The notes under the pieces are model-generated. The model was not told the origin of the DNA. It made no database searches and worked only from the letters and a program-made list of their open reading frames with translations. Positions 14,630-62,939 of a DNA stretch of 64,000 nt are shown here, in pieces (position 1 is the stretch's first letter; the number at the start of each line of letters is the position of its first letter). A program made the translations under genes and the position numbers. The DNA lies in the NCBI RefSeq assembly GCF_032191835.1, contig NC_083228.1:24056001-24120000 (forward strand), given 5' to 3'. Source of the DNA: Heteronotia binoei (Eukaryota).

Positions 14630-17600
14630 CCCTCTCATGAATTGCTGCCTTGTCGTGGCAAGAGGGCTTGTGCGGTTCAATGAGGCTGTGGGCTATGCCA
14701 TGCAGGGCCACCCAAGATGGACAGGCCACAGCTGAGAACCCAGACAAAATGCGATCCACTGGAGAAGGAAATGGCAAACCACTCCAGTATCCTTGCCAAG
14801 AAAACCCCATGAACAGAAACAAAAGGCTAAAAGATATGGTGCTGGAAGATGAGCCCCTCAGGTCAGAAGGTGCCCAATATGCTACTGGGGAAGAGTGTTC
14901 AAGTAACCACAGAAAGAGTGAAGCGGCTGGGCCAAAGCCGAAAGGATGTTCAGCTGTGGATGTGTCTGATGGTGAAAGAACAGTTCGCTGCTGCAAAGAA
15001 CAATACTGCATCGGAATGTGGAATGTAAGATCTATGAATCAAGGTAAGCTAGATGTGGTCAAACAAGAGATGGCAAGACTGAACATCGACATCTTGGGAA
15101 TCAGTGAACTAAAATGGACGGGAATGGGTGAATTTAACTCAGAGGATCACTACATCTATTATTGTGGGCAAGGGTCCCGTAGAAGAAATGGTATAGCTTT
15201 TATAGTTAACAAGAGAGTGAGGAAGGCAGTAATGGGATACAATCTCAAAAATGACAGGATGATATTGGTCAGTATCCAAGGCAAACCATTCAATATCACA
15301 GTAATCCAAGTCTATGCCCCAATCACTGATGCAGAAGAAGTTGAAGTGGACCAGTTCTATGAAGATCTACAATGCCTTCTAGAATTAACACCAAAAAAAA
15401 GATGTCCTCCTCATCACAGGGGACTAGAATGCCAAAGTAGGAAGTCAAAAGGTGACCAGAACAACTGACAAGTTTGGCCTTGGAGAACAAAATGAAGCCG
15501 GGCAAAGGCTAATAGAGTTTTGTCAAGAGAACAAGCTGGTCATAGCGAACACCCTCTTCCAACAACCTAAAAGGCGACTCTACACATGGACATCATCTGA
15601 TGGACAACACAGAAATCAGATTGATTATATACTCTGCAGTCAAAGATGGAAAAGCTCCTTACAGTCAGCAAAAACAAGACCTGGAGCTGACTGAGGTTCA
15701 GATCATGAGCTACTCATTGCAAAATTCAGGCTTAAACTGAAGAAAACTGGGGAAGCTGTTAGGCCATTCAGGTTTGACCTTGATCACATCCCTTATGGAT
15801 ATACAGTGGAGGTGAGGAATAGGTTTAAGGAACTAAAGTTGATAGACAGAGTGCCTGAAGAACTATGGATGCAGGTTCGTGACATTGTACAGAAGGCAGC
15901 AGTCAGCACCATCCCAAAGAAAAAGAAATGCAAGAAAGCAAAGCGGCTGTTTGGTGAGGCTTTACAAATAGCTGAGGAAAGAAGGAAAGCGAAAGGCAAA
16001 TGTGAAAAGGAAAGATTCACTCAACTGAATGCAGATTTCTAGAGAACAGCAAGGAGAGATAAGGAGGTGTTCCTGAAGGAACAATGGGAAGAACAAGAGA
16101 TCTCTTCAAGAAAATTGGAGACATCAAGGGAACGTTTTGTGCAAAGACGGCCATGATAAAGGACAAAAATGGTAGGGACCTAACAGAAGCAGAAAAGATC
16201 AGGAAGGGGTGGCAAGAATACACAGAAGAATTGTACAAGAAGGATCTCAATGTCCCGGACAACCATGACAGTGAAATCGATGACCTTGAGCCAGACATCC
16301 TGGGGTGTGAAGTCAAATGGGCTTTAGAAAGCATTACTAACAACAAAGCGAGCGGAGATGATGGTATCCCAGTTAAGCTATTCAAATTCCTAAAAGATGA
16401 TGCTGTTAAAGTGATGCACACATTATGTCAACAAATTTGGAAAACACAACGGTGGCCACAGGATTGGAAAAGGTCAGTTTATATTCCAATCCCAAAGAAG
16501 GGTAATGCCAAGGAATGTTCAAACTATCGCACCATTGCACTCATTTCACATGCCAGCAAGGTCACATTAAAGATCCTACAAGGTAGGCTTCAGCAGTATG
16601 TAGATCGAGAACTACCAGAAGTTCAAGCTGGGTTTCGGAGAGGTAGAGCAACTAGAGATCAAATTGCCAACATTCGCTGGATTATGGAGAAAGCACGGGA
16701 GTATCAGAAAAATGTCTGTTTCTGCTTCATTGACTACGCTAAAGCCTTTGATTGTGTGGATCACAACAAACTGTGTCAAGTCCTTAAAGAGATGGAAGTA
16801 CCAGACCACCTCACGTGTCTCCTGAGAAACCTGTAAAAGGGTCAAGAAGCAACTGTGAGAATGGGATATGGAACAACTGATTGGTTTAGAATAGGAAAAG
16901 GAGTTTGGCAAGGATGTATATTGTTACCCTGCTTATTTAATTTATATGCAGAGTACATCATGCGGAATGCTGAACTGGATGAAGCACATACCGGAATTAA
17001 GATTGCCAGGAAAAACATCAACAACCTCAGATATGCAGATGACACTACTCTAATGTCAGAAAGTGAGGAGGACCTAAAGAACCTCTTGTTAAGGGTGAAA
17101 GAGGAGAGCACAAAAGTAGGCTTGACACTCAACATCAAGAAAAGTAAGATCATGGCCTCTGGCCCCATCACACCTTGGCAAATAGAAGGGGAAGACGTGG
17201 AAGTAGTGACAGACTTCACATTTCTGGGATCCAAAATCACTGCAGATAGTGACTGTAGCCATGAAATTAAAAGATGTTTGCTCCTTGGGAGGACAGCTAT
17301 GGCGATCCTGAGCAGTGTAATAAAAAGTAGAGACATCACCCTGCCAACAAAAGTCCATATAGTCAAAGCAATGGTATTCCCAGTAGTAATGTATGGCTGT
17401 GAGAGCTGGATCATAAGGAAGGCCGAGCGCAGAAGAATAGATGCTTTTGAGATGTGGTGTTGGAGAAGACTCTTGAGAGTCCCTTGGACTCAAATCGGTC
17501 AGTCCTAAAGGAAATCAACCCAGAATGTTCACTGTTAGGTCAGATGCTGAAGCTGAAGCTGAAGCTCAAATACTTCTCACCAAATGAGAAGGGAGCACTC

Positions 17601-33437: not shown

Positions 33438-36390
33438 CTAACAGCCACTGATGGACCTCTGCTCCATATTTTTATCCAATCCCCTCTTGAAGCTGGCTAT
33501 GCTTGTAGCTGCCACCACCTCTTGTGGCAGTGAATTCCACATGTTAATCACCCTTTGGGTGAAGAAGTACTTCCTTTTATCCGTTTTAACCTGACTGCTC
33601 AGCAATTTCATCGAATGCCCAGAAGTTCTTGTATTGTGAGAAAGGGAGAAAAGTACTTCTTTCTCTACTTTCTCCATCCCATGCATTATCTTGTTAACCT
33701 CTATCATTTCATCCCACAGGCAACGTTTCTCCAAGCTAAAGAGCCCTAAGCGTTTCAACCTTTCTTCATAGGGAAAGTGTTCCAACCCTTTAATCATTCT
33801 AGTTGCCCTTTTCTGAACTTTCTCCAATGCTATAATATCCTTTTTGAGGTGCAGCGACCAGAACTGCACACAGTACTCCAAATGAGACCGCACCATCGAT
33901 TTATACAGGGGCATTATGATACTGGCTGATTTGTTATCAATTCCCTTCCTAACAATTCCCAGCATGGCGTTGGCCTTTTTTATTGCAAATGCACACTGTT
34001 TGACATTTTCAGTGAGTTATCTACAACGACCCCTCTTGGTCAGTCTCTGCCAGTTCACACCTCATCAACTTGTATTTGTAGCTGGGATTCTTACTTTGCA
34101 CTTGGCCACATTGAACCTTATCTGCCACGTTGACGCCCACTCACCCAGCCTCAACAGATCCCTTTGGAGTTCCTCACAATCCTCTCTGGTTCTCACCACC
34201 CTGAACAATTTACTGTCATCTGCAAACTTGGCCACTTCACTGCTCACTCCCAACTCCAAATCATTTATGAACAAGTTAAAGAGCATGGGACCCAGTACTG
34301 AGCCCTGTGGCACCCCACTGCTTACCGTCCTCCACTGCGAAGACTGCCCATTTATACTCACTCTCTGCTTCCTATTAATCAGCCAGTTTTTGATCCACAA
34401 GAGGACCTGTCTTTTTACTCCATGACTCTCGAGCTTTCTAAGGAGCCTTTGATGAGGAACTTTATCAAAAGCTTTCTGGAAGTCAAGGTAAACAACATCT
34501 ATTGGGTCTCCTTTGTCTATATGTTTGTTCACCCGCTCAAAGAAATGTAACAGGTTAGTGAGGCAACATCTTCCCTTACAGAACCCATGCTGAGTCTTCC
34601 TCAATAACCCGTGTTCATCAATGTGCCTACTCATTCTGTCCTTGATAATGGTTTCTACCAACTTTCGCGGTATTGAAGTCAGACTGACTGGCCTGTAATT
34701 TCCCGGATCTCCTTTGGAACCCTTTTTAAAGATGGGGGTGACATTTGCTACCTTCCAGTCCACAGGAACGGAGGCAGATTTCAATGAAAGATTACAGATT
34801 TTTTTCAGAAGATCCACAAGTTCAACTTTGAGTTCTTTCAGAATTCTTCGATGTATGCCATCCGGACCTGGTGACTTATTAGTTTTTAATTCGTCTATCA
34901 GTTGTAGGACCTCCTCTCTTGTCACCTCAATCTGACTCAAGCCTTTCAACACCCCTTCCAATATAAGTGGTTCTGGAGCAGGCAGACACTTCTCATCTTC
35001 CACAGCGAAGACGGAGGTAAAAAATGCATTCAGCTTCCCAGCCATTTCCCTATCCTCCTTCAGTAATCCTTCTACCCCTTGGTCATCCAAGGGCCCCACT
35101 GCCTCCCAGGCTGGTTTCCTACTTCTAATATATTTGAATAAATTTTTATTGTTGGTCTTTATGTTTTTTTTGCAATATGCTCCTCATAGTCCCTTTTTGC
35201 CTGCCTGATCACAGTCTTGCATTTGATTTGCCACAGCCTGAGTTCCCTTTTATTAATCTCACTTGGACTGTTCTTCCACCGCTTAAAGGAGTCCTTCTTG
35301 CCTTTTACAGCTTCCATTACTTTGTTTGTTAACCATGCAGGCCTTTTCTTATACCTGTTTGTGCCTTTCCTAACTTGTGGTATATATTTTATCTGAGCTT
35401 CTAGGGTTGTAGTTTTAAATAGCCTCCAAGCTTCCCCAAGGGTTTTGACCGTATTTACCTTTCCTTGCAGTTTCCTCTTCACATGTCTCCTCATCTCAGA
35501 GAGTTTACCCCTTTTAAAATTAAACGTGGTTGTGCCGGTCTTTTGGGGCAACTCCCTATTTATACAAATGGTGAAATCAATAACATTATGGTCACTGCTC
35601 CCAAGCGGTGCAATCACTTTTACATCTCTCACCAAGTCTTGGGCATTACTTAGGACCAAATCCAGGTTCGCCCCACCCCTGGTAGGTTCTGAGACCATCT
35701 GCTCCATAGCACAGTCATTGAGAGCATCAAGAAACTCAATCTCTTTTGACCAGAACATATATTGACCCAATCAATCTGCGGGTAGTTAAAATCACGTATT
35801 ACGACACAGTTTTTAGGTTTAGCTGCCATCTTTAATCCTTCCATCATATTATAATCGTCCTCTATCTTTTGATTTGGTGGGCGATAACAAACTCCCATAG
35901 TTAAATTTCCTTTTGTGCCCTCTATTTCAACCCAAACCATTTCTAGAAGGGAATCTAATTCTCTGACCTCAGTCTTACTGGACCGTATATTCTCTCTGCT
36001 ATACAGAGCCACCCCACCTCCAACCCTTCCCTCCCTATCCTTCCGATGTAACTTATATCCAGGAATCACCGTGTCCCACTGATTCTCCTCATTCCACCAA
36101 GTTTCTGAAATTCCCACGATGTCTATGTTTTCTCCCAACACTAAACATTCCAATTCACCAATTTTATTTCAAACACTTCTAGCATTTGCATACAAACATC
36201 TATAATTTCCCAGGCAAGCTAGGCCTGCCGCCTCGAGACTTTGGCAGACAGTCCATACTGTTTGTCACCATCACAGTGGACAACTCTGATCCATTACCCG
36301 GTAGAAAAGTAACAGCTAACACTTCATCTCTTTGAGATGAGTCCTCCCGAACCAGAGACTTTTAATCTCCTGTCGGCTTTCCCCCAATAT
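33438..36390 (-). pseudogene. CR1 ORF2 (APE endonuclease + RT), frameshifted
   Basis: ORF pieces 35650-36153, 35159-35770, 34065-35099 and 33438-33965, with small deletions near 34030-34100. Confidence 0.9.
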
Positions 36391-58623: not shown

Positions 58624-58947
58624 TATATCCTTTTATATCAAAATGGAGAAAATAAACAAATCAGCCCTGCAGCAGTGCAGAAGCCCCCAGTCTGCATCTG
58701 TCCTCTGCACAAATGCTCACTCCGTATAACTCCCTGCCTTCTTGAGACATCTTCTTCTGCCCACTATGGAATGCTACCTATCTTTCGGGGGGGGGGGTAC
58801 CCAATGCCTCCCCTCACTCACTGTGTAGCTGTGCTTGCCTTCATGATGTTGCCAGACACCATTCTGTGCTCATTCTGTAGTTATTCATGCTTTGTGAGTG
58901 CTCGTATTCTCTCTCTGCTTCCTCTGGCACAGGAGAGTTTTCATTTT

Positions 58948-60557
58948 TTTTTTTACTTCCTCAAATTTTATTATAGACTCATTACAATTACTACCTGTTA
59001 TAACAGGTAGGTGTACCATAATAACAAATCAAAAACAAGGCAACTTAAAAATATCTCATATGTTACCATTCCATACCACTTAAAATATATATATGTCTAT
59101 TTATATTTTCTATTTTTTTATAGCAGAGAAATAATTAAGCTTAACAATGCTGCTTTCCCTAACAGTTTTTTAAAACTTAATACCACAAGCATTCAATATA
59201 ACTTCTTATTTTCCTTCTTCTTCTATATCTTGATTATTCCTTCTACTCTCAAAAAAAAAATCCATAAAGAATACATTCTAACTATATATCTCAGTCCCTG
59301 GAGAACTTAAAATTAAGGTCAAGAAGAAAAAAAACCCCCTCTTCTTTCTTCACCTGGACTGAATTAAACAAGGAGGGATGTTACCCAGGTGCTCTCACCA
59401 GCTGACCCCACCCAGCCTTAAATTCTGAAAGAAAAAACAATAACTATAAATTATAAGGTTCTTCAGCTTTTCCCTTTTCTTGTTGCTTCAGTGTCTTTTA
59501 AATAGAGTCCATATTTTCTTCCAGATTGACATGAACTTCCTCAGTACACACACGGGTTGTCCTTGGAGGAACGAGTGGAGAGCATTCCTTTCTCTTATTA
59601 ACTCTTGATGTAGGAGAGGAAGGAATTAATTTAGAGAGTAGTATCTCACCCGAGGCTGCGTCATAAGCTGTAAACGAAGTGGATCCTTTTTGGACACATA
59701 GTTTGCCTGATTGTAGCCATTTATATTTAATTTTTAAGTCCCGCAATTTGGCAGTTGTGTCCTTAAGGTCTCTTCTGATTCTTAAAAATTCAGGAGGAAG
59801 ATCCAGAAAGACCTGAATATTTAACCCCTGGTAGTCCAAGCCTCCTCTATCCCTAGCCTCTGCAAAGACTCTTTGCCTCATTCTATAATCCTTGAACTGC
59901 ACCACAATATCTCTGGTATAAGATGAATTGTCTTCACATACCTTGCCAACACGATATGCTTTCTGAATGAGTGGGAGAATTTCGACTTCCAGGTGGGTTA
60001 CTTCAGCAAGCCAATTTGCCATGAATATATATAAGTCCATTTCAGCTTCCACATCCGATTTAAAACCTCTAAATTTTAAGCACAGCTCCAGGCTACGAAA
60101 GTCCATTGTTAAAACTCGTTCCCTCGTCCATGCATCTGAAGTCATCTCTTGAGCTTTTTTTAACGCTTCTTGTGCGGTCTGGGTTGCCTGTTTACAAGAA
60201 TTCTCTAATTCATCCAGACACTGACACATTGGTTGAAGCATAGAAGTTACGTCATCTCGTATTTCTTGTCTTAATTTAGACATAGCTTGAGACAATAAAT
60301 TCACAGTGAGAGGGCTATCTTCAGTTTCTGGTTCCTCATCTCTCCCCAACCTTGCGTGGGAGGTGGACGGCTGTTCCAAGAAATTAGTTAAAGGCTGAAA
60401 GCTTTTTTCCTTCTGCTTGGTTTCCCCCCCCCCCCCTTTCGGAGGCATCTTTCAAAAGTTCAAAAAATATAGTTAAAGGGGTGAAAAAAAATATAACGTT
60501 GGAGACAGTTGGGAGAGCGTTAGGCAAAAGCTCCTGACCGGATATTGGTCAGAGCCT
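58948..60557 (-). mobile_element. L1 ORF1-only (half-L1/HAL1-like) retroposon
   Basis: About 110-bp 5' UTR, an intact ORF1, and a 3' UTR of about 550 bp with no ORF2. AATAAA at 58967-58972, A tail, and a 13-bp TSD GAGTTTTCATTTT (58935-58947 / 60558-60570) at a TT/AAAA site. Confidence 0.85.
59498..60448 (-). CDS. L1-type ORF1p (coiled coil + RRM + CTD), 316 aa, uninterrupted
   Basis: MPPK start, heptad-rich segment, LKFRGF..IQKAYRVG..RDIVVQFKDYRMRQRVF (RRM-like) and IQVFLDLPPEFLRIRRDL..IKYKWL (CTD-like). Confidence 0.85.
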   Translation of the reverse strand: MPPKGGGGETKQKEKSFQPLTNFLEQPSTSHARLGRDEEPETEDSPLTVNLLSQAMSKLRQEIRDDVTSMLQPMCQCLDELENSCKQATQTAQEALKKAQEMTSDAWTRERVLTMDFRSLELCLKFRGFKSDVEAEMDLYIFMANWLAEVTHLEVEILPLIQKAYRVGKVCEDNSSYTRDIVVQFKDYRMRQRVFAEARDRGGLDYQGLNIQVFLDLPPEFLRIRRDLKDTTAKLRDLKIKYKWLQSGKLCVQKGSTSFTAYDAASGEILLSKLIPSSPTSRVNKRKECSPLVPPRTTRVCTEEVHVNLEENMDSI

Positions 60558-61649
60558 GAGTTTTCATTTTAACTGCTGGTTTAACTGGAACTTTTTCTTT
60601 TGTCACTCTAAATTTTACTGGGGATGATTTCTTGAGTGAGGAGCACAGCTCCTGAGCATTTCTTTCTCACTAGAGAGAAAGGAAGTTTCAGCCTAGCTGT
60701 GTGGGTTTCCCATTTAACTGTATTCCCCACTGTAGTCAGTGGAAAGAAATCAATAAAAAATGAAAGTAATAAAATGAATTAATGTAAAATGTAAAATGAA
60801 AATTTTGAAATGAAGAAAGTCCACATCCCAAGTGGTATTTATGTTTCTCTGTTAATTAGTTGAATCACTTAATTAACATTTACAAACAACAAAAATACAG
60901 TTTAAAATGATGACATAACCAATGAAAAATCTGAGTTGCTTTGCTTGAAGTGGAATAGTTCCTACTGAGAAATGCCTAATGAATATATTGAATTATCTCA
61001 TGTCGCTATCTAATTATGCATTCCTTTTAACATTTTCTTGGAACAACTAATAAATCTTACTTAACAGAGTAACCCAAAATATAAATTAGCCATTGCTTTG
61101 TAGATAATTAATAAAAGGTTGATAAGTCATTAATTGATTTGGCAAGTCCTGATCCTATTGTGAAAGAAACATAAAGCTAATCAGGGCTGAGCTGAATGTT
61201 TTGAGACTGACATGTTCTGCTGCAATGGAGGCTTGGGATGGGATTATTCACAAAAATATGCCCCTCAGTCTTCTTGTTTACCCTCCACCAGCTTCTTGCA
61301 GACCAGACCGTGATGATGAATGGGCTATCCATTGCAGCTCCACCCCAGATGCATGACCCAACACAGGAGGGCAGAAAGCATTGCCCTAACTCTTTGTGAT
61401 TTGGCCTTAGTATTTCACCTTGTGGCCAAATCTGATTGGCTAAGGGTAGGTGAAACCAGAGTAAGGGCAATGCTTCTTCCCCCCTTCTGGCATTGTGTTG
61501 CCCAGCCAAAGTGAAAAACAGCACTGAACCAGAGCACAATCCCCACCAGGGATGATTTAGAATACTCAAAACAGGTGTTCAGAAACTGAATGCACCTCTG
61601 GCTGTTGTAGATTTTCTGGGCTGTGTGGCCGTGGTCTTGGCATTGTGAG

Positions 61650-61692
61650 AACTGACGTTTCACCAGCAACTGTGACTGGCATCCTCAGAGGT
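61650..61692 (-). ncRNA. second, slightly decayed hammerhead motif on the opposite strand
   Basis: ACCT-CTGAGGA-T-GCCAG-TCACAGTTG-CTGGT-GAAAC-GTC-AGTT, with a G-U closing pair and one stem I mismatch. Confidence 0.55.
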
Positions 61693-61762
61693 GTAATCCA
61701 GAAAGCTGGAGGTTTTGGGGGGGCTTTTTTGACCCAGAGAGAACTCCAGTTTTCTGGGTTAC

Positions 61763-61805
61763 ACCTCTGAGGATGCCAGTCAAAGTTGCTGGCGAAACGT
61801 CAGGT
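61763..61805 (+). ncRNA. minimal type I hammerhead ribozyme motif (PLE-type)
   Basis: ACCT-CTGAGGA-T-GCCAG-loop-CTGGC-GAAAC-GTC-AGGT: stem I 4 bp, stem II 5 bp and a palindromic ACGT helix III. Confidence 0.7.
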
Positions 61806-62939
61806 CTCACAATGCCAAGACCACGGCCACACAGCCCAGGAAATCTACAACGGTCAATGGACTCTGGCTGTGAAAGCCTTCAACAACATATTGAATGTAC
61901 CTTGTTTGCAATGCCTGTTGGCAGTCAAATCGAGCAGCTCATACAACCACTTGCAATTCAAAGCAAACAGAATTTCAAGCAATACTGTACATGTGAGAAG
62001 CATGTAATGTTAATTTGTAAATTCATCCCTCTCCCTTTGGAGTACAGGGTAATGTACACACTGCCGTATCTTACTATATATATAAAACAATTTTATTTTG
62101 TAAGTATAAAAGATAAAAGTACAATACACTCTTGTGCATACACACAACAAGCATCCAGTGCCATTCTCCTTGTTTTAAGTGTTGCTATATTTGAAGTTTC
62201 GAATTAGCATTTATCGTTGCAAGCATCATTTGCAAGCACTGTTACTCAGCAGCACTACTTTGCATCTTTACAAAAGTTGTTCTTTGCTCCTGCCCAGATA
62301 TACACATGGATGACGGTGCATTTTTTATTCCTGCCACTTTGATGCCCAGATTCCTATTTTAGTTGTGCAAATTGAACCAGCAGCTGTATTTTCCATGCCA
62401 TTTTCTGTTTCTTTGCTCTGAATTTTCCTTGTAAGAGGTACACATTTTTTCCAGTGTTATTTCTGAGTTACCAGAGAACTTGAATACCCAGTGTTCTTCC
62501 AGTGAGCTTCATTTGACCAAATACTGATTTGAACCCAGGTATCCCCACTCCAAGTTGGACATTCTAGCCAGTTATATGACACTAGAGATTTGTAAATAGC
62601 ATTCATTTTGCCATCAGAGTTTTAATAAATAAACATATGACATCTTCACAGCTGTTTTATTAGAAGGATATCAGAAGTGGGGGACCAGTTTCTCAGTTTA
62701 ACAGAGAATTGTGACTTTTAGCATTGTTTTTGGTAGCAAACCACTTGGAAGACATAAATACATAATTGGCTTATATTTGTCTCTCTGTCTGGCAGATGTT
62801 ACTTTGTCCTCACAGATTTCTTTCTACTGATTAATTAGTTTTGGCAGTCAGCTGCCTCAAATTGCATTTCTGAATCATTACAAACATATTTTCTCCTTTT
62901 AACTGCAATATTAGGAAAGGACATAATGGCTGAAATATC

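What the first reader, a model, noticed from the sequence alone, without database searches (positions are those of the whole stretch)
58948..60557. Complete ORF1-only half-L1 retroposon with an intact ORF1p in a lizard
Seen: a 1.6-kb unit bounded by a 13-bp TSD (GAGTTTTCATTTT) at a canonical L1 endonuclease site (TT/AAAA on the - strand). It has a 5' UTR of about 110 bp, a stop-free 316-aa L1-type ORF1, an AT-rich 3' UTR of about 550 bp with no trace of ORF2, AATAAA 12 nt before an A tail. Established: HAL1 elements are non-autonomous L1 derivatives encoding only ORF1p, described mainly from mammals, and they need ORF2p in trans. Inference: this is a possibly undescribed, recently active squamate HAL1-like family that supplies its own RNA chaperone and parasitises L1 ORF2p. 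Alternatives: a prematurely polyadenylated or internally deleted single L1 copy.
Basis: partly seen in the sequence, partly recalled or inferred. Interest (0 to 1): 0.8.

Follow-up and report, generated by a model that had tools for sequence, protein, structure and literature searches.

The report
ORF1-only half-L1 retroposon family
This 1.6-kb insertion is one copy of a family of about 200 short jumping elements that kept only the RNA-binding gene (ORF1) of an L1 retrotransposon and must borrow the copying enzyme from full L1s; the design is known from mammals as HAL1 and here appears to have arisen separately in a reptile-type genome.

Summary

**The copy.** Window 58948-60557 (- strand) is bounded by an exact 13-bp target-site duplication at a TT|AAAA site. 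It has a 109-nt 5' UTR and an intact 316-aa ORF. A 3' UTR of about 543 nt carries AATAAA 12 nt before an A7 tail.

**The family.** The genome holds 177 matches to the family's 5' end and 211 to its 3' end. All 39 copies I examined are ORF1-only, and nearly all have their own duplication (median 15 bp, TT|AAAA consensus). A second subfamily, only about 79% identical in DNA, has the same architecture, so the design is old.

**The protein.** It is an L1-type ORF1p with coiled coil, RRM and C-terminal domain. The top fold matches are the human L1 ORF1p trimer.

**Selection.** ORF1 is under purifying selection. dN/dS is 0.16-0.20 between subfamilies. Variants shared among copies are depleted in amino-acid changes, while private ones look nearly neutral.

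**Not shown.**
- The autonomous L1 that supplies ORF2p is not identified.
- The progenitor L1 is not identified.
- Current activity is not shown: the closest pair of copies is 99% identical.
- I could not verify the host taxon.

The scan's first readers noted similar ORF1-only elements elsewhere in this genome. I found no paper describing HAL1 outside mammals.

The parts
60558..60570 (-). Upstream copy of the 13-bp target-site duplication (sense AAAATGAAAACTC), preceded by TT in the target
   Evidence: found by script
60449..60557 (-). 5' UTR, 109 nt. It lacks the family's terminal Gn-AGT and contains an inverted repeat around a CCAAT motif (CTGACCAATATCCGGTCAG). It is the presumed internal promoter.
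   Evidence: The promoter role is inferred. Only 1 of 109 columns carries a variant shared among young copies, against 5-6% in the ORF and 3' UTR.
59498..60448 (-). ORF1, 316 aa, intact (stop codon included)
60086..60304 (-). Predicted long helix (aa 49-121), the coiled-coil region of ORF1p
   Evidence: AlphaFold2 model, pLDDT about 88 over aa 50-100. Foldseek alignment to the human ORF1p trimer.
59804..60082 (-). RRM domain of ORF1p (aa 123-215)
   Evidence: There is a weak Pfam PF02994 match at aa 161-213.
59627..59794 (-). C-terminal domain of ORF1p (aa 219-274)
   Evidence: (2jrb, weak)
58955..59497 (-). 3' UTR, AT-rich, with no ORF2 remnant
58955..59052 (-). 3'-terminal 98 nt that fold into one long hairpin enclosing the apical palindrome CTACCTGTTATAACAGGTAG
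   Evidence: MFE -21.8 kcal/mol, z = -2.6, 1 of 200 shuffles as good. The same fold is predicted in other copies and in the old subfamily.
58967..58972 (-). AATAAA polyadenylation signal, 12 nt before the tail
   Evidence: It lies within a 24-mer found 211 times in the genome.
58948..58954 (-). A7 tail
   Evidence: Tails are 0 to about 12 A in other copies.
58935..58947 (-). Downstream copy of the 13-bp target-site duplication

Best explanation
The element is one copy of a dispersed family of about 200-350 copies of non-autonomous, L1-derived retroposons that encode only ORF1p. This makes it a functional equivalent of mammalian HAL1.

Proposed cycle:
1. Pol II transcribes the element from an internal promoter in the roughly 110-nt 5' UTR, starting at a G-run. 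The transcript is polyadenylated after AATAAA.
2. The 316-aa ORF1p (coiled coil, RRM, C-terminal domain) is translated and coats its own RNA.
3. ORF2p from an autonomous L1 in the same genome nicks TT|AAAA sites and reverse-transcribes the RNA by target-primed reverse transcription. This leaves 10-22-bp target-site duplications.

Because the template is short, most copies are full length. The ORF1-only design is old. At least two subfamilies, separated by dS of about 0.5, both have it and both retain intact ORFs. ORF1p has been kept by purifying selection, so the element needs its own protein to propagate.

Shown here: the family, its architecture, the insertion signature, the protein type and the selection. 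Inferred: promoter function, cis action of ORF1p, and the use of L1 ORF2p in trans.
For: **Family.**
- 40 near-full-length DNA matches at 90-97% identity, out of 340 first-look candidates.
- 177 genomic matches to a 30-mer at the 5' end (control 0) and 211 to a 24-mer at the 3' end (control 2).

**Independent insertions.**
- 31 target-site duplications were measured by script, with median length 15 bp.
- T at -2 in 22 of 31 and at -1 in 21 of 31. A at +1 in 22 of 31 and at +4 in 23 of 31. Base frequencies are about 0.29.
- Further copies also have their own duplications.

**No ORF2.**
- All 39 copies examined end after the 3' UTR.
- tblastn with ORF2 proteins found nothing.

**Old architecture.** Copies with ORF1 70-82% identical to the window's align over positions 2-1595 at about 79% DNA identity, and they have their own duplications.

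**Protein type.**
- The best solved-structure sequence matches are human L1 ORF1p, E = 0.005.
- It is 28-35% identical (E = 1e-26 to 1e-28) to ORF1s in this genome that pass the Pfam PF02994 cut-off.
- The AlphaFold2 model shows a helix, an RRM and a C-terminal domain.
- The top 10 Foldseek matches are the human ORF1p trimer, E = 8e-9.

**Selection.**
- Nei-Gojobori dN/dS is 0.16-0.20 against an intact old-subfamily copy, with dS about 0.5 and dN about 0.09.
- Singleton substitutions are 125 nonsynonymous to 47 synonymous, including 8 stops. Variants shared by 3 or more copies are 32 to 26. Fisher p = 0.015; the shared set against the neutral expectation gives p = 6e-5.
- 13 of 30 young copies keep the 315-317-aa ORF.

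**ORF2p donors exist.** Full-length L1s with the same insertion signature are present:
- L064, which sits inside a copy of this family, has a 15-bp duplication and an A15 tail.
- L051+L067 has a 15-bp duplication at ATTT|AAAA.
Against: - No autonomous partner or progenitor could be tied to the family. There is no DNA similarity of the UTRs to two full-length L1 lineages or to 30 L1 ORF1 loci.
- The nearest ORF1p, inside or outside this genome, is only 35-37% identical.
- Pfam Transposase_22 scores below its cut-off (13.6 against 22.4 bits).
- Tails are very short (0-12 A), which is unusual for mobilisation that depends only on poly(A).
- The RNA evidence is weak. There were 28-45 reads per roughly 10 million sampled, unstranded, mostly 95-99% alike. 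One RNA contig carries another copy with its flanks, so read-through or DNA carry-over is not excluded.
- No copies are more than 99.0% identical, so current activity is not shown.
- Only the best-scoring candidates of each genome search were inspected.
Confidence: 0.82

Rival explanations
1. By-products of an autonomous master. A full-length L1 with this 5' UTR and ORF1 still exists. The 1.6-kb copies are dead-on-arrival products of premature polyadenylation in its long inter-ORF spacer, so the '3' UTR' is really spacer.
For: - The nearest L1 clade has 0.9-1.35-kb inter-ORF spacers (L051; the Eublepharis locus L066).
- One clear single case of a 3'-truncated, ORF1-only L1 copy with a target-site duplication exists (L053).
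- Purifying selection on ORF1 would also be expected under this model.
Against: - All 39 copies examined are ORF1-only. This includes 3 chosen because their 5' end lacked a listed 3' motif and 3 with long 5'-to-3' spacing, which are nested insertions.
- The 5'-end and 3'-end motif counts are similar, 177 and 211.
- The same end point is kept in subfamilies separated by dS of about 0.5.
Confidence: 0.06
2. Retrocopies of one or two host genes derived from L1 ORF1 (L1TD1-like). The selection seen would act on the host gene, and the copies would be processed pseudogenes.
For: - All copies share one 5' end and one poly(A) site.
- Shared variants show purifying selection while private ones look neutral. 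This pattern is also expected for pseudogenes of an evolving parent gene.
- L1TD1 shows that ORF1 can be domesticated (PMC4161310).
Against: - There are roughly 200 or more copies.
- 86 alignment columns carry variants shared by 3 or more of the 30 young copies, which implies many successive source copies.
- At least two deeply split subfamilies each have young copies and intact ORFs.
- No copy with introns was seen.
- 13 of 30 copies keep an intact ORF.
Confidence: 0.05
3. The family is mobilised by a non-L1 LINE such as CR1, L2 or RTE. That LINE's reverse transcriptase would recognise the conserved 3' hairpin, rather than L1 ORF2p acting on the A tail.
For: - A tails are very short.
- The 3'-terminal hairpin is conserved.
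- The 3' 24-mer is strongly conserved across subfamilies.
Against: - The target consensus TT|AAAA and the 10-22-bp duplications are the L1 endonuclease signature.
- The same signature is seen for two full-length L1s in this genome.
- The element ends in AATAAA plus A residues, not in the microsatellite-type tails typical of CR1 or L2 (my knowledge).
Confidence: 0.03
4. A single aberrant L1 copy, either internally deleted or prematurely polyadenylated.
For: None remains after the genome search.
Against: There are hundreds of copies with the same ends and different target-site duplications.
Confidence: 0.005

Closest known systems
Mammalian HAL1 (half-L1) families (Smit 1999; Bao & Jurka 2010, as cited in PMC5753468 and PMC4161310)
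   Same: It is a non-autonomous L1 derivative that encodes only ORF1p. It forms a dispersed multi-copy family with an L1-type insertion signature, and ORF1 is kept open. HAL1s are reported to have arisen several times independently (PMC5753468).
   Different: The ORF1p sits in a different L1 clade. It nests with ORF1s of reptile-type 'long-spacer' L1s and not with the mammalian-like families, so the origin is independent. A tails are very short and there is a conserved 3' hairpin. Two old lineages coexist. I found no paper describing HAL1 outside mammals. The Bao & Jurka paper itself could not be read.
Autonomous L1s with a long inter-ORF spacer (this genome: L051+L067; leopard gecko LOC129323355 locus, L066)
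   Same: These are the closest ORF1p relatives with known context, at 26-35% identity. They also have a short G-initiated 5' UTR of about 100 nt, an ORF1 of about 330 aa, an AATAAA plus short A tail, and TT|AAAA duplications.
   Different: They carry an EN/RT ORF2 of about 1,100-1,300 aa. There is no detectable DNA similarity of their UTRs or spacer to this family.
Drosophila HeT-A, a Gag-only telomeric non-LTR retrotransposon
   Same: It encodes only the ORF1/Gag protein and relies on reverse transcriptase supplied in trans (my knowledge; the term 'ORF1-only' is used in bioRxiv 10.1101/2025.06.09.658640).
   Different: It belongs to the Jockey clade. It targets telomeres, makes no target-site duplications at TT|AAAA sites, and has a host-beneficial role.
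L1TD1, a host gene domesticated from L1 ORF1 (PMC4161310)
   Same: It is an ORF1-derived coding sequence that is maintained without ORF2.
   Different: L1TD1 is a single-copy host gene. The sequence here is a dispersed, duplication-flanked repeat family with many decayed copies.

Membership tests
HAL1-type element (non-autonomous L1 derivative encoding ORF1p only) | Encodes an L1-type ORF1p (coiled coil, RRM, C-terminal domain) | tested here: met
   The top sequence matches among solved structures are human L1 ORF1p. It is homologous to PF02994-positive ORF1s in this genome, E = 1e-26 to 1e-28. The AlphaFold2 architecture fits. The top 10 Foldseek matches are the human ORF1p trimer, E = 8e-9.
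HAL1-type element (non-autonomous L1 derivative encoding ORF1p only) | No ORF2 (endonuclease/reverse transcriptase) in the element, as a property of the family rather than of one copy | tested here: met
   All 39 copies examined are ORF1-only. tblastn with ORF2 proteins was negative.
HAL1-type element (non-autonomous L1 derivative encoding ORF1p only) | Dispersed multi-copy family whose copies have individual target-site duplications at L1 endonuclease-type sites | tested here: met
   177 5'-end and 211 3'-end motif matches. Duplications have a median of 15 bp and a TT|AAAA consensus.
HAL1-type element (non-autonomous L1 derivative encoding ORF1p only) | ORF1 maintained by selection during amplification | tested here: met
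   dN/dS is 0.16-0.20 between subfamilies. Shared variants are 32 nonsynonymous to 26 synonymous, against 125 to 47 for private ones.
HAL1-type element (non-autonomous L1 derivative encoding ORF1p only) | Traceable derivation from a specific autonomous L1 (shared UTR or ORF1 sequence with a progenitor) | tested here: inconclusive
   There is only distant ORF1p homology (35-37% or less) and no UTR similarity to the sampled L1s. Sampling of this genome's L1 lineages was limited.
HAL1-type element (non-autonomous L1 derivative encoding ORF1p only) | Mobilised in trans by L1 ORF2p | not testable with these tools
   This is inferred from the insertion signature only and needs a retrotransposition assay.
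Mammalian HAL1 lineage (common descent with HAL1, HAL1b, HAL1M8) | ORF1 groups with mammalian L1/HAL1 ORF1 | not tested
   No mammalian HAL1 sequences were available. The tree places the family inside a clade that contains a gecko autonomous L1 ORF1 and far from the other L1 families of this genome. That argues for an independent origin.
Pfam PF02994 Transposase_22 (L1 ORF1p RNA-binding domain) | Score above the curated gathering cut-off (22.4 bits) | tested here: not met
   The score is 13.6 bits, E = 0.089. The old-subfamily protein has no hit at all. Relatives L046 and L051 pass with 30-31 bits. Membership of the fold is supported by structure.
L1 ORF1p | Homotrimer through the coiled coil | tested here: inconclusive
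   The trimer prediction gave no verdict: score 0.61 against 0.47 for the best control.

The most novel reading that the evidence does not exclude
This would be the first HAL1-type lineage described outside mammals. It is an old clade that persisted as ORF1-only elements through at least two coexisting lineages (dS about 0.5).

Its UTRs are more conserved than its synonymous sites. It has almost no A tail and a conserved 3'-terminal hairpin. Together these features would suggest a specific, 3'-end-recognising partnership with one L1 lineage, rather than generic poly(A) hijacking.

Other first-reader notes in this genome describe further ORF2-less L1 derivatives of 2.0-3.5 kb. ORF1-only parasitism of L1 may therefore be a general feature of genomes with many coexisting L1 lineages.
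Probability: 0.3. Interest if true: 0.6.

Novelty: new member of a known kind. Interest (0 to 1): 0.45.

Why it matters
HAL1 elements are the only known L1 parasites that carry their own ORF1p, and they have been described from mammals.

An independent, well-preserved family in a non-mammalian genome gives a natural replicate for three questions:
- Why would a non-autonomous element benefit from encoding its own ORF1p?
- How is cis-preference split between ORF1p and ORF2p?
- How do parasites of L1 behave where many L1 lineages coexist?

This family suits such work because it has many intact ORFs, clear selection and short full-length copies.

It also matters for annotation. These ORFs can be mis-called as host genes, as happened with the related gecko 'uncharacterized protein' that is really an L1 ORF1.

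Tried and rejected
**Searches that found nothing or too little**
- The search for homologous proteins found nothing at E <= 1e-3.
- The exhaustive representatives search found only distant relatives, at most 37% identical.

**Progenitor and partner search**
- blastn of the element against the window, 30 L1 ORF1 loci and two full-length L1s gave no UTR similarity.
- A local alignment of the 3' UTRs was not above shuffled controls.
- The own-genome protein search scores only about 126 candidates. All of them were the family itself, at 69% identity or more. Relatives between 35% and 69% identity could therefore not be reached.

**Candidates for an autonomous version**
- Three loci had the family's 5' and 3' ends 5-8 kb apart.
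- All three are copies interrupted by nested elements: a full-length L1, a copia-type LTR element, and an unidentified 6-kb insert.

**Other attempts**
- The trimer prediction gave no verdict and is not evidence either way.
- Reads laid on the element show low, family-level, unstranded coverage. This cannot separate the element's own transcription from read-through or DNA.
- Bao & Jurka 2010 is not held in the library.
- One literature search failed on a term that was too short.

**Limits I kept to**
Majority codons were used only inside a script, to classify substitutions.
Full report
**1. The observation**

- GAGTTTTCATTTT occurs at 58935-58947 and at 60558-60570, bounding 58948-60557.
- In the element's sense orientation (- strand) the target reads ...CAGTT|AAAATGAAAACTC, which is TT|AAAA.
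- The only long ORF is 59498-60448 (-), 316 aa, ATG to TAA.
- The 5' UTR is 109 nt.
- The 3' UTR is 543 nt with AATAAA at 58967-58972. Twelve further nucleotides follow, then an A7 tail.
- tblastn of L1 ORF2 proteins from this genome against the element finds nothing better than E = 0.09.

**2. It is a family, not a single event**

A DNA search of the window's own genome returned 40 scored matches at 90-97% identity. All start at position 2 and end at positions 1592-1610 of the 1610-nt query. There were 340 first-look candidates.

In the 30 loci fetched, each copy has different flanks and its own target-site duplication.
- For 31 duplications measured by script, the length is 10-22 bp with a median of 15.
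- T occurs at -2 in 22 of 31 and at -1 in 21 of 31.
- A occurs at +1 in 22 of 31 and at +4 in 23 of 31, against base frequencies of about 0.29.
- This is the TT|AAAA consensus of the L1 endonuclease (established knowledge).

Other copies begin with a variable G-run (2-10 G), then AGT GGCTCTGACC. The window copy begins A GGCTCTGACC and so lacks the first few bases.

A 30-mer at the 5' end occurs 177 times in the genome (reversed control 0). A 24-mer at the 3' end occurs 211 times (control 2). Most copies are therefore full length, and the family has roughly 200-350 members.

Tails are short, 0 to about 12 A.

**3. The ORF1-only design is old**

A protein search of the genome gave a gradient of ORF1 relatives from 100% down to 69% identity.
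- Three of the 70-82% class were fetched (L061-L063). They align to the window element over positions 2-1595 at about 79% DNA identity, are 1.65 kb long, and have their own duplications.
- Three 5' ends that lacked a listed 3' motif (L070-L072) are also complete ORF1-only copies with duplications.
- Three loci with the two ends 5-8 kb apart are copies interrupted by nested elements. L064 holds a full-length L1 with a 15-bp duplication. L068 holds a copia-type LTR element. L069 holds an unidentified insert.

In all, 39 copies were examined and none carries ORF2.

**4. The protein**

Sequence evidence:
- Pfam Transposase_22 matches only weakly, at 13.6 bits against a cut-off of 22.4.
- The best sequence matches among solved structures are human L1 ORF1p (2ldy, 2ykp, 2yko; E = 0.005; aa 161-229). 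A weaker match is the mouse ORF1 C-terminal domain.
- Against ORF1s of this genome that pass the Pfam cut-off, the protein is 28-35% identical over 195-222 residues, E = 1e-26 to 1e-28.
- The alignment shows the conserved L1 ORF1p blocks.

Structural evidence:
- The AlphaFold2 model has mean pLDDT 69, rising to 80-92 in the folded part.
- It gives a disordered N-terminus, a long helix at aa 49-121, an RRM at 123-215, a C-terminal domain at 219-274 and a disordered tail.
- The ten best Foldseek matches in the PDB are all the human LINE-1 ORF1p trimer, or its RRM plus C-terminal domain, with E down to 8e-9.
- A trimer prediction gave no verdict.

**5. Selection**

Nei-Gojobori comparison of 13 intact young copies with the intact old-subfamily ORF gives dS of 0.46-0.58, dN of 0.085-0.096 and dN/dS of 0.16-0.20.

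| Substitutions within the 30 young copies | Nonsynonymous | Synonymous |
|---|---|---|
| Singletons, presumably post-insertion (8 are stops) | 125 | 47 |
| Variants shared by 3 or more copies, presumably in source lineages | 32 | 26 |

- Singletons are close to the neutral site ratio of about 3.7.
- Shared variants fall below the neutral expectation with p = 6e-5.
- Singleton against shared gives Fisher p = 0.015.
- This is the pattern expected if copies decay neutrally while the source elements need a working ORF1p.
- 13 of 30 young copies keep the 315-317-aa ORF, and several old-subfamily copies are also open.

Between subfamilies the UTRs are 80-86% identical. That is less diverged than synonymous sites (raw pS about 0.37), which suggests constraint on the UTRs too. 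I have not explained this further.

**6. Age**

Pairwise identity among the 30 young copies is 93.0-99.0%, with a median of 96.6%. Private substitutions are 0.2-2.0% per copy, and 1.1% for the window copy.

If I assume about 1-2e-9 substitutions per site per year, which is my assumption, insertions date to roughly the last one to fifteen million years. Ongoing activity is not shown.

**7. Relatives, origin and partner**

The exhaustive protein search found 457 relatives. None is more than 37% identical.

The only named one is a leopard-gecko 'uncharacterized protein'. It turns out to be ORF1 of an autonomous L1 with a 1.35-kb inter-ORF spacer.

In this genome, L051+L067 is a full-length 6.15-kb L1 of the same clade.
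- It has a G-initiated 5' UTR of about 97 nt and a 336-aa ORF1.
- It has a spacer of about 0.9 kb and an ORF2 with one frameshift.
- It ends in AATAAA plus an A12 tail, with a 15-bp duplication at ATTT|AAAA.

A maximum-likelihood tree puts the family on a long branch (1.48 substitutions per site) inside this 'long-spacer' clade. It lies far from the 341-aa L1 families of the genome.

One L1 of that clade (L053) is a single ORF1-only, 3'-truncated copy with a duplication. Premature termination in the spacer therefore does happen, and it is a plausible route to the family's origin. This is inference.

No DNA similarity links the family's UTRs to any sampled L1. Both progenitor and partner remain unidentified. 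Two different L1 lineages show the same insertion signature and could donate ORF2p.

**8. The 3' end**

The last 98 nt fold into one long hairpin of -21.8 kcal/mol, z = -2.6, with 1 of 200 shuffles folding as well.
- The same fold is predicted in other copies and in the old subfamily.
- The lower stem uses four G-U pairs, so it can form only in the sense RNA.
- Together with the very short tails, this raises the possibility that the 3' end is recognised by the reverse transcriptase. I did not test it.

**9. Expression**

Three RNA-seq runs kept as raw reads gave 28-45 reads each from about 10 million sampled.
- The reads are confined to the element, fall on both mate orientations, and are mostly 95-99% alike.
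- Contigs of a fourth RNA run cover parts of the element, and one carries another copy together with its flanks.
- This shows that family RNA, or DNA carry-over, is present. It does not show autonomous transcription.
- A run labelled as a second organism holds about a fifth of the sampled words, which hints that a related species carries the family.

**10. Known or new**

HAL1 is described as a non-autonomous L1 derivative encoding only ORF1p that arose several times in mammals (PMC5753468, citing Smit 1999 and Bao & Jurka 2010; PMC4161310).

Full-text searches found no paper on HAL1 in lizards or other non-mammals. Repeat libraries could not be checked.

First-reader notes of this scan flag similar ORF2-less L1 derivatives elsewhere in the same genome. 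These are leads only, not independent evidence.

I file the element as a new member of a known kind: a HAL1-type family of independent origin.

The host taxon is coded in the tools, so 'lizard' is unverified. The gecko relative is compatible with a squamate host but does not prove it.

Noticed in passing
L064 (G000:C7:123037600-123045590, reverse strand): A full-length 6.6-kb L1 is inserted in the same orientation inside a copy of this family, at element positions 291-306. It has a 15-bp duplication (AGAAATACGAGAGGA). Its 5' end contains CAAGATGGCCG, which resembles the YY1 box of human L1. ORF1 is open, ORF2 is about 1,100 aa with one frameshift, and the tail is A15.
   Followed up: partly
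L051+L067 (G000:C20:9432090-9440400) and L066 (Eublepharis macularius CM053278.1): These are autonomous L1s with unusually long inter-ORF spacers, about 0.9 kb here and 1.35 kb in the gecko. The gecko ORF1 is annotated as host gene LOC129323355.
   Followed up: partly
L053 (G000:C1:225559658-225562930): A single 1.36-kb ORF1-only, 3'-truncated copy of the L054-type L1. It has a 13-bp duplication (ACAAACTTAAACC) and no A tail, which shows that prematurely ended L1 RNAs are retroposed in this genome.
   Followed up: partly
L068 (G000:C9:5376700-5382160): An old-subfamily copy is interrupted by a 3.7-kb insert. The insert carries an open 891-aa copia-type gag-integrase ORF with Pfam hits to Retrotran_gag_2, rve and gag_pre-integrs.
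   Followed up: partly
window 60427-60439: A run of 13 C on the + strand (G in sense) lies inside the N-terminal coding part of ORF1. It gives GGGGE where other copies read GGKK or GGEK, and it makes the window ORF one codon longer. The tract is length-variable.
   Followed up: no
G000:C5:25802830-25804087 and G000:C1:244180902-244182215: Family copies whose ORF1 match is split by about 180-240 bp but still reported within one open frame of 388-402 aa. They may be in-frame internal duplications.
   Followed up: no
window 14650-17508 (+) and 34065-35770 (-): Decayed LINE fragments with Exo_endo_phos and RVT_1 Pfam hits. They show no DNA or protein similarity to the finding.
   Followed up: partly
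L071 (G000:C1:106177400-106180480, reverse strand), about 1553-1789: A family copy with its own 15-bp duplication lies 14 nt upstream of a same-strand fragment of the C-terminal 79 aa of an L1 ORF2. This is most likely an insertion into an older L1 remnant.
   Followed up: no
window 61600-61889: An earlier first-reader note (s1-340748) reports paired hammerhead ribozymes in a Penelope-derived hairpin just beside the finding. I did not examine it.
   Followed up: no
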